NCBI GenBank assembly: GCA_904063045.1
Contig: CAJFCJ010000002.1
Location: forward strand, 2,351,891 to 2,415,890
Reading direction: 5' to 3'
DNA from: Dimorphilus gyrociliatus
Lineage: Eukaryota; Animalia; Annelida
Length of the DNA stretch: 64,000 bases
Part shown: one piece after another, positions 45,011-50,603 of the stretch
How the letters are laid out: every line of letters starts with the position of its first letter
Position numbering within the stretch: the stretch's first letter is position 1
Translations under genes and position numbers: made by a program
Notes under the pieces: model-generated
What the model was told of the DNA's origin: nothing
What the model saw: the letters and a program-made list of their open reading frames with translations, nothing else
Databases searched by the model: none

Positions 45011-46669
45011 ATGAAAACCTTTATCGTTTTGTCGGTGCTTGTTTGTCTAGCGTTAGCCGATCCTACTGTATACTTTAAAGAAGAGTTTGGAGGTTAGTTT
45101 ATTCTAATTTTGCTATAAAAGAGAGAATTTACAAAGCCGGTTTCAGAGGGTTGGAGCGACAGATGGGTCAATTCTAAACATCGTTCAGATCAAGGAAAAT
45201 TCGAATTAAGTGCCGGAAAATTCTATGGTGATGCTGAAAAAGATAAGGGTATAAGAACCTCTGAAGACGCTCGCTTTTACGGAATCTCCGCCAGTTTTGA
45301 TAAGTTCTCGAACGAGGGAAAGACCTTGGTCATCCAATTCTCTGTTAAACACGAGCAAAATATCGACTGCGGTGGTGGCTACGTTAAGGTAAAGAATTTT
45401 TATATCTTATCTTGAGTCACTTCCCTTTAGGCAAGGAGCACATGTTGCACCTAAATGCGCACAAGATTATATGATGGCACCTCGTGTGTGCTGGTGCTAG
45501 CACATAGATCGATAAAGACTAAATGTATCGCAAATATATCTTTTAAGAATATTTCTATGTCTAACAGGTTTTCCCCAGTGACTTGAAACAAGAAGATATG
45601 CATGGAGAAACACCATACGCCATTATGTTCGGCCCAGATATATGTGGACCTGGAACCAAGAAAGTGCATGTTATCTTCAATTATAAAGGCAAGAATTTGC
45701 TTACCAAGAAAGACATCCGCTGCAAGGATGATGTCTTCACCCACGTTTACACCTTGATTGTTAAGCCCGATAATACATACGAAGTTAAAATCGACAACGA
45801 AAAAGTTGAAAGTGGTGAATTGGAAGCTGATTGGGACTTTTTGCCACCAAAGAAAATCAAGGATCCTAACGCCAAGAAACCAGAAGATTGGGATGATAGA
45901 GAGAAAATTGATGATACTGATGATAAGAAACCTGAAGACTGGGATAAGCCTGAGCACATTCCTGATCCAGATGCCAAAAAGCCCGATGACTGGGATGATG
46001 AAATGGACGGTGAATGGGAGCCCCCACAAATCGACAACCCAGAATACAAAGGTGAATGGAAACCCAAGCAAATCGACAACCCCAACTACAAGGGACAATG
46101 GATCCACCCTGAAATCGACAACCCAGACTACACCGCTGATGACAAATTGTACAAATACGATGACATTGGTGCTATTGGTTTCGATTTGTGGCAAGTAAAG
46201 AGCGGAACAATCTTTGATAACGTCTTGATCACTGACGATGTAGCCCATGCAGAAGAATTTGCCAAGGAGACTTGGGGAGCATCCAAGGATGGTGAAAAGA
46301 AAATGAAAGATGCTCAAGATGAGGAAGAAAGAAAGAAACAAGAAGAAGAAGACAAGAAGAGAAAGGAAGAAGAAGACGGTAATTTTTTTTTTACTTGTAG
46401 CAATATGACATATATCGCTATCGATAACTTATGGTAATCTACCCATGGTATGATGATTCGCGCGTGTATTCAATGGTGTCCAGGCCTCTGAAACATCTGA
46501 TGAAAATGTGCATAACTGATCATTTTTAAGAAATTAGGGCTTCTTTGTAAACTTTTAAACACTACTAAATATTCATTTTATATTTACAGCTAAGAAGGAA
46601 GATGAAGATGAAGACGACGGTGATGACAAGGAAGAGTCACCGAAATCCGAGGATCACGATGAATTGTAA
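45011..46669 (+). CDS. CALR: Calreticulin
   Basis: Signal peptide, FVIQFSVKHEQNIDCGGGY-like segment (LVIQFSVKHEQNIDCGGGYVK), YAIMFGPDICG, P-domain KPEDWD repeats, GFDLWQVKSGTIFDN, acidic tail ending HDEL*. Confidence 0.99.
45410..45507 (+). ncRNA. Candidate H/ACA snoRNA in calreticulin intron 2; predicted 28S target GUAGG-U-AAGGGAAGU
   Basis: Stem TCTTG/CAAGA; pocket halves ACTTCCCT (45419-26) and CCTAAAT (45450-56); H box AGATTA exactly 14 nt from the pocket apex; ACA at 45502-04. The second hairpin is short and atypical. Confidence 0.55.
46447..46523 (+). ncRNA. C/D box snoRNA in the last calreticulin intron; SNORD66-like guide for 18S Cm1272 equivalent
   Basis: C box ATGATGA 46450-56, D' CTGA 46488-91, C' TGATGA 46498-503, D CTGA 46516-19. 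The 12-nt guide GTGTCCAGGCCT is antisense to 18S AGGCC(C/U)GGACAC. Confidence 0.85.
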
Positions 46670-46961
46670 ATTAGCGGAATTTTCGTAGGTTTATACTGAC
46701 TTTTTCAAAAATATTTACATCGATGGGTTTCCTTTCATCTCTCATAAACGTTTGTTGGTTTTTGCATCGATTCATATCCTACATCCGAAGTTTCATCCTT
46801 TGAAAGAAATTCCGTCATGGTTAAATGTTTCAGTTTAATGTTGAATGTAAGAGAATAGTATTTTTTTGAATATTCATATTTCATATTTATTGTAATTCTC
46901 AACAAAATGTAATAAAACCAAATTATTAAAATAATTGAGCATCAAATATATACGATATTTA

Positions 46962-49262
46962 TCACAAGTTGATTTCATAACGAATAACTGGTTTGCCCGT
47001 TCCAAACATAAGAAATACGGCACAACCTAAATAACACATGAAAGCAGTTAAAGTAAAGACAATTGCCCAGCTTGACCAAACATCGAGCAAATATCCAGTA
47101 ACATATACTCCCAAGAATCCGGGTATAGAACCAGCCGTGTTCATTAAACCAAAGACAGATCCTGCAAACTGTGGTGCTATATCTTGAGGATTGACAAGTA
47201 TCCCTCCTCCGTGAAACCCGCAAAATAGTAAAGCAGCAGCCATGCAAAACAAAGCAGATGTAAAGGTGGTTGTAAAGTTAAGTATTAACAGACACGTTCC
47301 AACACCCACTAACGTTATGACCTGAAAATTCGTGTTTCGCTATTGTTATAAAAGTATAATAAGAAATAGTGAACCTACCGCCATTAACTTTCTTACAAAA
47401 GTAATGGAGAAGCCACTCCTGATCATTTCATCAGCGATGTAGCCGCTACAAATAGAGGCTGGAATATTTACTAGCCATGGAACAACGTTGAATATCCAAC
47501 CCTATAAGAAAGATATAAAAGAGATATATTCAAAGGGTAGACATTTCTATTGCAGTATAAGTTCAAACACAATAGGTTCTAAACATGAAAAGATAGAAGG
47601 TAGGTGATCTCATCGACCTGTATAGTAATCATATTACCTTCTCGTCAGGAAATTTATCCTGAAAATACGTTGGTAGCCACGATAAAATAATAAACCAAGC
47701 ATTATTATTCGTGAAATGAGAAATTATGATGGCCCTGAAAATTCTTTCCTTTTTAAGAAATCACTTAATTTCAATAAAAATAAACCTATAAAGAGAAAAT
47801 TTATCTACAGGATTAAGACAGCGAAAGCAAAGGAAAGAACTAAACCACACATAGTGAAACCAAGAGACATAAAGTATATCTTCACGTTCATTTTCCTTAA
47901 ATTATATGAAATCAACTAATCAAAGACGAACAATGAAAAAATATAGGAATATTAAATAAATCATATCCCTAATTAATTAATTCATAATTTAAGAAAGGAT
48001 GAACTGTGAGATATAGTGCAATATTTATTCACCTTGGCCTGAGGATAATTATCGTGAAAGTAGGTTGGAAGCCAGTTCAGTAGGAAGTAATAAGCACAAT
48101 TTTTACAAAATTGACCAATTATAATTGACCTGAAAAGACGGATTTAAAAAATTGTAATCTTTCTTTTTTTAATTTAGTCAAATTATTTCATTTATTGAAA
48201 GTATACTGAACTGGCTTTTCAAATTAATATTTTCAAGATGGATAACAATGGAATATTCAACTATTAAATAAATTATTCTCGATTTTACGCTCAATTTTTA
48301 AGATAAGCAGGATAACGTTTGAAAATTATATAAGGTGAAAAGGAAAGTGTCTAGCATTTTGAAAATATTGCTTTAAATGTTCAGTTAAAGCAGTTATTTT
48401 CTTTGATTGATAAGGAGTGACTTATACTTTACTAACCAAAATTCTTTTTTGGAAAAAAGGAGCTTCCAAGGAACTTTTAAAGGCTTTTTAACTTTTCCCG
48501 GGACCAAGTTTTCTTGCAAGCTTAGAATTTGAGTACTTCGCATTTTCTTATCCAGCATTATAAACTTATAGACGGCAGCCCATGTAAGAGCTGATATTCC
48601 TACAAAATAAAATACAGAAGTCCAACCATATCTACTTAAGAGTAAAGATCCAATACTTCCACAAAGAATAGTTCTGGAGATAGACAAGTTTCATAATCAA
48701 TCTGTTTTTATAAAACTTAGTATAAGATAACATACCCGAATTGAGCTCCAGATGCAGACGATGTAAAGGTAAAGGATTTTTCTTTTTCGCTAACACGTTG
48801 AGAGGTAATACTAGTTAATGCTGGGAAGTGAACGCCTTCTAAGCAACCGATTACAATTCTTGACACAATGATGCAAAAAAAAATAAGTGATGAAGAGCTA
48901 AACAAGTGTGCTATATTTGGCGTTATGAATGTTAATGCACTCCATCCAACTCCAGCTAAGAATATAACCTTTTCCCCATTTATCCTATCGCTGAGATATC
49001 CTCCAAGAACTTGAGTTAAAGTATATCCCCAAAAGAATGACGATAAAATAATTCCTGTTTGAGTTTTTGACCATCCAAACTCTTGACTTATAGCAGGTGC
49101 ACATAATGGCATTACCGTCCTACAAGCATAATTAAAAGCACAGCTAAACCATAAAGCTATAATCCAATATTTTTTCTCGGATCTTGGCCAATATTTCGTT
49201 TGATTATTGTCATCATCTTGCCTGATGGCTAATAGAGGTTTTTCATTGTCGGAGCTATCCAT
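46962..49262 (-). CDS. SLC17A9: SLC17A9-like MFS anion / vesicular nucleotide transporter
   Basis: LSSFFWGYTLTQVLGGYLSDR, SWLPTYF, GWIFNVVPWLV, VNPQDIAPQFAGSVFGLMNTAG. Confidence 0.9.
47638..47734 (-). other. SLC17A9 mutually exclusive exon B (97 nt; AIIISHFTNNNAWFIILSWLPTYFQDKFPDEK)
   Basis: ttttcag acceptor, gtaata donor, same length and phases as exon A and homologous to it. Confidence 0.85.
48033..48129 (-). other. SLC17A9 mutually exclusive exon A (97 nt; SIIIGQFCKNCAYYFLLNWLPTYFHDNYPQAK)
   Basis: ttttcag acceptor, gtgaat donor, phase 2 in and phase 0 out. Confidence 0.85.
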
Positions 49263-49912
49263 TTACGAATTTAAAGATTCAGTTGAAATTTTACTTCATA
49301 TGCCACGTAGCAAAATATCTTCATTCAATAGCTATAAAAAGTGCCTTTTGAACAATTTAGTAATTCATGGTTTTTAGGTATTATTTTACAATATAAAGTT
49401 AACAAATCTATGATTTGTTTTTTTATATATAATTTACTGAAAAGACAAACCGGAATATTAACTATTCCAGCGCCATCTATAAATATGACTTTAAATTTAG
49501 CGCCTTATCCATAAAATCAGGCTACAAAAAACATGATGAATAACCGTTCATACGCTATGATTGCTCTATACTATAGTAATACGTGCAATTATTCTATATT
49601 TCGAATTTAAGGTACAATACGAAATTATTTTGTGATATTGGAAATATTATTTGCCATTTTTTTTTTCAATGATAAAGTCGATTGGCGGAGAAAGACGAGT
49701 TGAATGTCAAGAATGTCAGAACTTTCTAGAATAATTCATTAAAATCGTAAGACTGTGTCAAAATTAAGAGTTAAACTAGCAATTAACTTTTAGGATTGAA
49801 CAAAACACAAATCATTTGATAGTCAATAGCCACTTAGGCACGATGTATTTCCGAGAGCGCGTACTAACTCACACGACATGTTATAAACGATGTAAAGATA
49901 AATCAAGCTAAT

Positions 49913-50603
<691 letters not shown>

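What the first reader, a model, noticed from the sequence alone, without database searches (positions are those of the whole stretch)
47638..48129. Mutually exclusive duplicated exons swap the substrate-lining TM7 of SLC17A9
Seen: two homologous 97-nt exons with the same phases (SIIIGQFCKNCAYYFLLNWLPTYFHDNYPQAK and AIIISHFTNNNAWFIILSWLPTYFQDKFPDEK). Both are stop-free with good splice sites. Including both or skipping both shifts the frame, so only one can be used. Known, from memory: this helix aligns with VGLUT2 TM7 ANFCRSWTFY, whose Arg322 contacts substrate. That position is Lys in exon A and Asn in exon B. Inference: one gene makes two transporters with different cavity charge, possibly different anion or nucleotide specificity or tissue use. 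I know of no such switch described for SLC17.
Basis: partly seen in the sequence, partly recalled or inferred. Interest (0 to 1): 0.82.

Follow-up and report, generated by a model that had tools for sequence, protein, structure and literature searches.

The report
Swappable TM7 exons in worm SLC17A9
The vesicular nucleotide transporter gene (SLC17A9) of the tiny marine worm Dimorphilus gyrociliatus carries two alternative copies of the exon for its seventh membrane helix; RNA contigs show each copy spliced in without the other, so one gene makes two transporters whose substrate pockets are lined differently, a well-known kind of splicing not yet described for this transporter family.

Summary
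On the minus strand, two homologous 97-nt exons (A 48129-48033, B 47734-47638) lie between the same flanking exons. Either one alone gives a 447-aa open frame; both or neither shifts the frame into early stops.

Spliced contigs of one public run hold all four junctions (exon 2-A, A-exon 4, exon 2-B, B-exon 4) at similar depth. No A-B joint was listed.

A relative with saturated synonymous sites and unalignable introns keeps both exons open, with splice sites (30/32 and 26/32 residues identical).

The gene is Dimorphilus gyrociliatus DgyrCDS1487. The annotated protein equals isoform A, so isoform B is unannotated.

The exon encodes TM7. Exon A's Lys264 aligns with VGLUT2 Arg322, where exon B has Asn. 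Four of six positions matching VGLUT2 binding-site residues differ between A and B.

A 14-bp stem between the upstream intron and exon A is conserved in the relative and may influence exon choice.

Paralvinella has two such exons, and RefSeq already annotates TM7-exon isoforms in abalone, Aplysia and scallops. I found no paper describing this for SLC17. Any difference in transport between the isoforms is untested.

The scan has noted other mutually exclusive exon pairs in this genome, in other genes.

The parts
48736..49262 (-). Coding exon 1 (ATG at 49262; 527 nt; TM1 to TM5)
   Evidence: Pfam MFS_1 E 1.8e-20. Spliced to exon 2 in an X2 contig, joint 48673>48736. Part of P0336, which equals isoform A.
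48437..48673 (-). Coding exon 2 (237 nt; TM6 and central loop). It ends with TG of a Trp codon that the first G of exon A or B completes.
   Evidence: Junctions to both A and B in X2 contigs.
48204..48217 (-). Intronic arm of the conserved stem (RNA AAGCCAGUUCAGUA), 74 nt upstream of the exon A acceptor
   Evidence: Perfect 14-nt complement of the exon A interior. Kept 14/14 in the relative's otherwise unalignable intron. Present in the MFE and centroid folds.
48033..48129 (-). Alternative exon A (97 nt; TM7 variant with FCKNCAYY; Lys264 at the VGLUT2 Arg322 column). This is the exon in the public annotation.
   Evidence: Joints 48127>48435 and 47500>48032 in X2. 30/32 aa kept in the relative, dN/dS about 0.02.
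48069..48082 (-). Exonic arm of the stem (RNA UACUGAACUGGCUU, Leu-Leu-Asn-Trp-Leu codons of exon A)
   Evidence: In the relative, two synonymous changes give one G.U pair and lose one terminal pair, leaving 13 bp.
47638..47734 (-). Alternative exon B (97 nt; TM7 variant with FTNNNAWF; Asn at the Arg322 column). It is unannotated.
   Evidence: Joints 47733>48436 and 47500>47637 in X2. 26/32 aa kept in the relative, with synonymous change 5/19 against 126/166 in constitutive exons.
47379..47501 (-). Coding exon 4 (123 nt, GWIFNVVPW...), joined to either A or B
46962..47321 (-). Last coding exon (360 nt including the stop)
   Evidence: joint 47319>47377.

Best explanation
This is a pair of tandemly duplicated, mutually exclusive exons in the Dimorphilus gyrociliatus orthologue of SLC17A9, the vesicular nucleotide transporter. 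Each mRNA takes exon A or exon B, so the gene makes two 447-aa transporters that are identical except for 16 of the 32 residues that form TM7, the first helix of the C-domain, which lines the central substrate cavity. Shown: both exons are spliced in singly, both are kept by selection, and they differ at four of the six TM7 positions that line or bind substrate in VGLUT2, namely Q/H, K/N (the Arg322 column), Y/W and Y/F (the Tyr327 column). Inferred: the two isoforms differ in substrate affinity or selectivity, or in gating. Exclusivity of the productive message follows from the frame, because 97 is not divisible by 3: double inclusion or skipping gives early stops upstream of later junctions, which are likely NMD targets. 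Also inferred: exon choice is influenced by a conserved 13-14 bp RNA stem between intron 2 and the interior of exon A. The stem encloses exon A's branch region, pyrimidine tract and acceptor; the direction of its effect is unknown.
For: Anatomy and frame. RNA: run X2 matches the window at 99% or more, has introns removed at GT..AG, and holds all four single-inclusion junctions at depths 159-304. Constitutive exons are at about 920-1040 and introns at about 30. No A-B and no exon 2-exon 4 joint was listed. Selection: in relative L001, constitutive exons have pS 0.72-0.85 and introns about 53% identity, yet exon A is 86% and exon B 88% identical at nucleotide level, both are open, both are 97 nt and both keep AG/GT. 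Exon B's synonymous constraint has p = 2.9e-5. Identity: P0336 DgyrCDS1487 equals isoform A, and the named best hits are SLC17A9. Structure: an AF2 model with pLDDT 92 has helix 252-282 as the seventh TM helix, and its best fold matches are sialin, VGLUT2 and DgoT. Lys264 aligns to VGLUT2 Arg322. Arg322 and Tyr327 coordinate substrate, and TM7 moves most between states. Recurrence: the same exon is duplicated in Paralvinella, Haliotis (3 copies), Aplysia and scallops. Positions 9 (Arg322 column) and 14 (Tyr327 column) differ between the alternative copies in 4 of 5 lineages. Stem.
Against: The RNA evidence comes from one run of one study, and from assembled unitigs with only 26-28 nt on the short side of each junction. 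Contigs cannot show absence of rare A+B or skipped forms, nor tissue or stage use. The run's library type is not on record; that it is RNA is inferred from the splicing. The Arg322-equivalent column is not conserved in SLC17A9 (E23, Q17, H11, K2 and others among 70 sequences; Ala in a vertebrate-like group that carries no names), so it is not required for nucleotide transport as Arg322 is for glutamate transport. Half of the differing residues lie off the cavity face. No transport data exist for any invertebrate isoform. Isoform B could not be modelled. The stem's chance expectation from length alone is only about 1-2% in this AT-rich DNA; its support rests on one other species.
Confidence: 0.8

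Rival explanations
1. Both isoforms are made, but they transport the same substrate in the same way. The duplicate persists because of split expression (different cells or stages), or because TM7 variants suit different membranes, partners or trafficking, not because of a change in cavity chemistry.
For: The Arg322-equivalent column is the most variable TM7 column in SLC17A9. Scallop copies differ by only 2-3 conservative residues. Several A/B differences lie off the cavity face. Surveys report that most changes between human duplicated exons are conservative.
Against: Four of the six positions matching the VGLUT2 binding-site residues differ, including a charge change, Lys to Asn. The same two substrate-coordinating columns change in 4 of 5 independent lineages.
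Confidence: 0.15
2. Exon B is a decaying or noise exon: a leftover duplicate that is sometimes spliced in but gives no useful protein.
For: It is absent from the public annotation, since P0336 carries exon A. Its dN/dS (about 0.3) is higher than exon A's (about 0.02).
Against: It is open, 97 nt and flanked by AG/GT in a relative whose introns are randomised, and it is 26/32 aa and 88% nt identical. Its junction contigs are as deep as exon A's. It resembles the single TM7 exon of Capitella at 23/32 positions.
Confidence: 0.03
3. The two contig paths come from two gene copies or haplotypes, each with one exon version, rather than from alternative splicing of one gene.
For: Unitig graphs cannot tell a splicing bubble from paralogue variation on their own.
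Against: The genome window holds both exons in tandem between the same flanking exons, and so does the relative's contig. All X2 pieces match this locus at 99% or more with no other letters. Unspliced contigs run through intron 2, exon A, the A-B intron and into exon B (records 6 and 8).
Confidence: 0.02

Closest known systems
RefSeq-annotated SLC17A9(-like) isoforms of molluscs (Haliotis asinina X1/X2/X3, Aplysia californica X1/X2, Argopecten, Pecten and Mizuhopecten X1/X2)
   Same: It is the same gene family and the same 32-codon TM7 exon with the same boundaries. The isoforms are of equal length and differ only in that exon. In gastropods the Arg322-equivalent column changes between copies: E, H and S in Haliotis, E and H in Aplysia.
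   Different: These are products of automatic annotation, and I found no paper describing them. The alternative copies do not group with the worm's copies, so the duplications are probably independent. The worm pair reads K/N. No intron-exon stem was examined there.
SLC25A3 (mitochondrial phosphate carrier) exons 3A/3B and other tandem duplicated exon substitutions in transporters and channels (SLC39A14, CACNA1C)
   Same: These are homologous, same-length exons used one at a time, giving isoforms that differ in a membrane-embedded segment. The class is enriched in ion transport genes.
   Different: They belong to different folds and families. Those cases are vertebrate or ancient events with known tissue switches; for the worm pair, tissue use is unknown.
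VGLUT2 TM7 substrate site (Arg322, Tyr327, with N319, S323, F326, L330)
   Same: The helix is homologous. Exon A keeps the FC-basic motif (FCK against FCR), and both exons keep Asn at the S323 column and Leu at the L330 column.
   Different: VGLUTs have one invariant TM7 with an essential Arg. SLC17A9 orthologues vary freely at that column, and here splicing offers two versions.
RNA-structure-guided exon choice (Dscam-type docking site and selector; stem around beta-tropomyosin exon 6B; both recalled from memory)
   Same: A conserved long-range base pairing next to one exon of a mutually exclusive pair.
   Different: There is one stem only, between an intron and the exon body. No competing partner exists for exon B, so it is not a docking/selector system.

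Membership tests
SLC17A9 / VNUT (SLC17, anion:cation symporter branch of MFS) | 12-helix MFS fold of SLC17 type | tested here: met
   Pfam MFS_1 on exons 1, 2 and 5. AF2 model with pLDDT 92.1 and pTM 0.90, with two six-helix halves. Foldseek top matches are sialin, VGLUT2 and DgoT, TM 0.73-0.80.
SLC17A9 / VNUT (SLC17, anion:cation symporter branch of MFS) | Closer to annotated SLC17A9 than to VGLUT, sialin or NPT paralogues | tested here: met
   Exon 1 alone hits proteins named SLC17A9 at E 1e-35 to 1e-40 with 45-50% identity. It hits VGLUT2 and sialin only at E 1e-12 to 1e-14. The full protein is 26-28% identical to the solved paralogues. All named hits of the profile search are SLC17A9 or MFS18. 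No tree with outgroups was built.
SLC17A9 / VNUT (SLC17, anion:cation symporter branch of MFS) | Conserved cavity arginines (TM1 and TM4; VGLUT2 R88 and R184 columns) | tested here: met
   R48 and R135 are invariant in 70 orthologues. R135 aligns with the VGLUT2 TM4 Arg in RILQGLVEG. The TM1 correspondence of R48 was not checked by alignment.
SLC17A9 / VNUT (SLC17, anion:cation symporter branch of MFS) | Membrane-potential-driven nucleotide (ATP) transport | not testable with these tools
   The function is inferred from orthology only.
Mutually exclusive, tandemly duplicated exons | Adjacent homologous exons of the same length and phase with their own splice sites | tested here: met
   Both are 97 nt, share 61/97 nt and 16/32 aa, and have AG and GT on both sides.
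Mutually exclusive, tandemly duplicated exons | Each exon is found joined to both flanking constitutive exons in RNA | tested here: met
   Four junctions in X2 contigs. This rests on one run, with short sides of 26-28 nt.
Mutually exclusive, tandemly duplicated exons | Messages with both or neither exon are absent or unproductive | tested here: inconclusive
   Both forms are frame-shifted with early stops, and no such joint is listed. However, contigs cannot show that rare forms are absent.
Mutually exclusive, tandemly duplicated exons | Both copies are kept by purifying selection | tested here: met
   Relative L001: exon A is 30/32 aa identical (pN 0.026) and exon B 26/32 (pN 0.091), against saturated synonymous sites and random-level introns.
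Docking-site/selector competing RNA structures (Dscam type) | One docking site with alternative complementary selectors, one per variable exon | tested here: not met
   The intronic arm has a single partner, inside exon A. No match with 3 or fewer mismatches lies near exon B. Exon B stems are GU-rich and not positionally conserved.

The most novel reading that the evidence does not exclude
In lophotrochozoans the TM7 exon of SLC17A9 has been duplicated several times independently (dinophilid and alvinellid annelids, gastropods, scallops). Each time the copies differ at the columns that bind substrate in VGLUT2 (Arg322, Tyr327). If so, these animals use splicing to switch the substrate selectivity or charge handling of one vesicular anion/nucleotide transporter, and in Dimorphilus a conserved intron-exon RNA stem sets the choice.
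Probability: 0.3. Interest if true: 0.7.

Novelty: new member of a known kind. Interest (0 to 1): 0.5.

Why it matters
How VNUT recognises nucleotides is unresolved: the PDB copy searched here holds no SLC17A9 structure. These natural TM7 swaps are ready-made chimeras. They leave the rest of the protein untouched and change the helix that binds substrate and moves most in VGLUT2. Comparing the two worm isoforms, or the abalone three, would show directly which TM7 residues set selectivity, affinity or gating in this family. The repeated duplication of the same exon in separate lineages suggests that selection favours tuning this helix. The conserved stem gives a simple, testable case of RNA structure acting on exon choice in a genome with very short introns. 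On the practical side, the public Dimorphilus annotation lacks isoform B and the Paralvinella annotation lacks its first TM7 exon.

Tried and rejected
- **Docking/selector competition:** rejected. The intronic arm has only one partner.
- **Conserved stems for exon B:** the candidates are GU-rich, AT-rich and lie in non-matching introns in the two species, so exon B's strong synonymous constraint stays unexplained.
- **Steric or U2/U12 incompatibility as the exclusivity mechanism:** rejected. The A-B intron is 298 nt and all sites are GT-AG.
- **One ancient duplication shared by annelids and molluscs:** not supported. The alternative copies do not group across lineages, and the Lys-bearing copy is first in Dimorphilus but second in Paralvinella. 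With 32 residues this cannot be excluded.
- **Orthologue loci L004-L008:** these turned out to be spliced transcripts without introns.
- **Failed look-ups:** Argopecten, Tigriopus and Owenia proteins were not on record. Capitella has no contig on record and was not looked up.
- **Literature searches for mutually exclusive exons in SLC17/SLC17A9/VNUT:** nothing relevant was found, and two surveys do not list SLC17.
- **Isoform B model:** a spliced protein has no reference and I did not type it, so only isoform A (P0336) was folded.
- **Residue orientation:** the structure tools return no coordinates, so side-chain orientation was not read from the model. The cavity-facing assignment rests on homology to VGLUT2.

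Full report
**Observation**

The gene lies on the minus strand. Reading that strand and splicing it in a script gives these coding exons:
- exon 1: 49262-48736
- exon 2: 48673-48437
- exon A: 48129-48033
- exon B: 47734-47638
- exon 4: 47501-47379
- exon 5: 47321-46962

Exons A and B are each 97 nt. Each follows ...ttttcag and precedes gt. Each begins with a G that completes the Trp codon left open by exon 2, and each ends on a codon boundary. They share 61/97 nt and 16/32 residues. With A alone or B alone the frame stays open for 447 residues. With both, a stop falls 9 codons into exon B. With neither, a stop falls 9 codons into exon 4.

**Is each exon used?**

Two searches for sequencing runs gave four runs that hold the sequence, and I laid all four on 46900-49400.

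Run X2 (organism coded, 2017, library type not on record) matches at 99% or more with no other letters. Its contigs lack the introns exactly at GT..AG, so it derives from RNA. It shows these joints:

| Joint | Junction | Depth |
|---|---|---|
| 48127>48435 | exon 2-A | 175 |
| 47500>48032 | A-exon 4 | 159 |
| 47733>48436 | exon 2-B | 208 |
| 47500>47637 | B-exon 4 | 304 |

It also shows the two constitutive introns removed. Constitutive exons sit at depth about 920-1040, the exon A and exon B unitigs at 248 and 304, and the introns at about 30. No A-B joint and no exon 2-exon 4 joint is listed.

Caveats:
- This is one run of one study.
- The data are unitigs, with only 26-28 nt on the short side of each junction.
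- Contigs show presence, not absence, and their depth is only a rough guide.
- The other three runs cover exons 1-2 only.

Within these limits, both single-inclusion messages exist at comparable levels, well above unspliced background.

**Identity of gene and organism**

Exon pieces match Pfam MFS_1, and among solved structures they match VGLUT2/3 and sialin best. Exon 1 alone finds proteins that their sources name SLC17A9, "voltage-gated purine nucleotide uniporter", at 45-50% identity.

I then searched with a profile made of one full-length orthologue plus the window's and a relative's exon peptides. It retrieved P0336, "DgyrCDS1487 [Dimorphilus gyrociliatus]", 447 aa. P0336 is identical residue for residue to my spliced isoform A.

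So the window is from D. gyrociliatus. Earlier scan notes had said so, and this confirms it. The public annotation holds only exon A, so isoform B is unannotated.

**Conservation**

P0001, an exon-1 ORF 80% identical to the window's, led to genomic contigs of an unidentified close relative (L001-L003). The whole gene is there in the same layout.

| Exon | aa identity |
|---|---|
| exon 1 | 80% |
| exon 2 | 77% |
| exon A | 94% (30/32) |
| exon B | 81% (26/32) |
| exon 4 | 93% |
| exon 5 | 91% |

- Both alternative exons are 97 nt, open, and keep AG and GT.
- Synonymous sites of the constitutive exons are saturated (pS 0.72-0.85), and the introns align at about 53%, which is random level for this composition.
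- Exons A and B are 86% and 88% identical at the nucleotide level.
- Exon A has pN 0.026 and pS 0.58. Exon B has pN 0.091 and pS 0.26.
- Exon B's synonymous change (5 of 19 sites) is far below that of the constitutive exons (126 of 166, p = 2.9e-5). This is typical of regulated alternative exons.

Neutral decay of either exon is excluded.

**Where the exon sits in the protein**

- HMMER aligns exon A residues 2-26 to VGLUT2 315-339, so that FCK lies on FCR and Lys264 on Arg322 (full-length alignment).
- Exon B matches sialin TM7 (AHFSYNW) best.
- An AlphaFold2 model of isoform A built with 70 orthologues is confident (pLDDT 92.1, pTM 0.90). It has helix 252-282 as the seventh membrane helix, just after the central loop.
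- Its best fold matches are sialin, VGLUT2 and DgoT.
- In the ligand-bound VGLUT2 structure, Arg322 and Tyr327 each coordinate a substrate carboxyl; N319, S323, F326 and L330 on the same helix move around the ligand; and TM7 shows the largest conformational change (bioRxiv 10.1101/2022.07.26.501550).

At those six columns exons A and B read Q/H, K/N, N/N, Y/W, Y/F and L/L, so four of six differ. The statement that the swap changes the cavity lining, including one positive charge, is therefore supported by homology. It is not shown directly: the structure tool returns no coordinates, and isoform B could not be modelled.

One caution weighs against a simple VGLUT analogy. Among 70 SLC17A9 sequences the Arg322 column is the most variable column of the helix (2.8 bits: E 23, Q 17, H 11, K 2 and others). 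A vertebrate-like group of representatives, which carry no names, has Ala there. The column is polar in most members, as expected for a cavity-facing site, but no particular residue is required for the family's function.

**The same exon is duplicated elsewhere**

I scanned genomic loci of orthologues with tblastn.

| Species | TM7 exon copies | Arg322 column |
|---|---|---|
| Haliotis asinina | 3 tandem, 32 codons each | E, S, H |
| Paralvinella palmiformis (annelid) | 2 (first unannotated, second annotated) | A, K |
| Ridgeia | 1 | H |
| Octopus | 1 | Q |
| Dreissena | 1 | E |

All duplicated copies checked have AG|G...AAG|gt boundaries.

RefSeq clusters show equal-length isoform pairs that differ only in this exon:
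- Haliotis asinina X1/X2/X3
- Aplysia X1/X2 (E-type against H-type)
- three scallops (2-3 residues apart)

Across the five lineages with duplicates, positions 1, 9 (Arg322 column), 11 and 14 (Tyr327 column) each differ between copies in four lineages.

The identity matrix shows one slowly evolving canonical type (25-29 of 32 residues shared among Dreissena, Haliotis copy 1, Paralvinella copy 1 and Octopus). The other copies are lineage-specific and do not group with each other. The Lys-bearing copy is first in Dimorphilus and second in Paralvinella. Several independent duplications are the simpler reading, but 32 residues cannot settle it.

**How exclusivity and choice may work**

Steric hindrance and U2/U12 incompatibility do not apply: the A-B intron is 298 nt and all sites are GT-AG. 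The frame rule makes double inclusion and skipping unproductive.

The introns around the pair (307, 298 and 136 nt) are two to five times longer than the constitutive ones (62 and 57 nt).

A repeat scan found a perfect 14-nt complement between intron 2 (48204-48217) and the interior of exon A (48069-48082), with 121 nt between the arms.
- The relative keeps the intronic arm 14/14 in an intron that is otherwise unalignable. From base composition I estimate the chance of that specific 43%-GC word recurring there at about 1e-6.
- The exonic arm carries two synonymous changes. One turns A-U into G.U and one removes the terminal pair, leaving 13 bp.
- In both species the stem is part of the minimum-energy and centroid folds (z -3.98 and -2.10).
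- It encloses the branch region, pyrimidine tract, acceptor and first 47 nt of exon A.
- By length alone such a repeat turns up in 1-2% of shuffles, so the case rests on conservation in one other species.
- The arm has no second partner near exon B, so this is not a docking/selector system.

Whether the stem hinders or helps exon A is not known.

**Comparison with what is known, and novelty**

Tandemly duplicated, mutually exclusive exons that replace a membrane segment are a well-known kind. Examples are SLC25A3, SLC39A14 and calcium channels, and surveys note enrichment in ion transport genes. The scan has already noted other such pairs in this same genome, in other genes.

For SLC17 I found no description in three literature searches or in the two surveys. 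Automatic annotation of mollusc genomes already contains the equivalent isoforms.

New here:
- the Dimorphilus pair, with RNA support and evidence of selection
- the unannotated isoform B
- the second annelid case
- the recurrent changes at substrate-coordinating columns
- the conserved stem

I class it as a new member of a known kind, of moderate interest.

**Limits**

- No raw reads were available, so there is no information on tissue or stage.
- Only one close relative was available.
- I built no outgroup tree.
- Isoform B has no model.
- There is no functional test.

Noticed in passing
window 48837-48839 (minus strand; residue 142 of the protein): The worm's SLC17A9 has Glu in TM4 (LEGVHFP) at the column of VGLUT2 Glu191, the allosteric H+/Cl- site. 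At that column 67 of 70 SLC17A9 orthologues have Gln. The close relative also has Glu.
   Followed up: partly
L010 10949-11050 and 14623-14724 (Haliotis asinina); proteins P0271/P0306, P0273/P0307, P0277/P0309, P0308/P0310, P0322/P0328: A second mutually exclusive exon pair in molluscan SLC17A9, covering the end of TM4 to TM5 (GFHYPG... against GVYMPC.../AVMPA...). RefSeq annotates it as equal-length isoforms in Littorina, Mya, Ruditapes, Mercenaria and Crassostrea gigas. In Dimorphilus this region is fused into exon 1 and has no duplicate.
   Followed up: partly
proteins P0298 and P0320 (Tigriopus californicus), residues 366-417: Equal-length copepod SLC17A9-like isoforms differ in a 52-residue stretch near TM9-TM10. 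This looks like a third, separate exon swap in the family.
   Followed up: no
L013 4196-4291 (Paralvinella palmiformis): An open, well-spliced, canonical-type TM7 exon lies 257 nt upstream of the annotated one and is missing from the deposited gene model.
   Followed up: partly
window 47823-47836 (minus strand, intron between exons A and B) and L001 3966-3979: A 14-nt pyrimidine-rich word (TTTCCTTTGCTTTC) is shared exactly with the relative, but there it lies in intron 2, a different intron. It may be a moved regulatory site or chance; about 2% of shuffles give words this long.
   Followed up: no
L009 3078-3236 (Ridgeia piscesae): A weak, stop-containing match to the GVHFP exon lies about 1 kb upstream of the real one. 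It may be a decayed copy of the TM4-5 exon that molluscs use alternatively.
   Followed up: no
window 45011-46437 (plus strand) and 49913-50409 (minus strand): By their ORF translations the neighbouring genes look like calreticulin and ribosomal protein S27.
   Followed up: no
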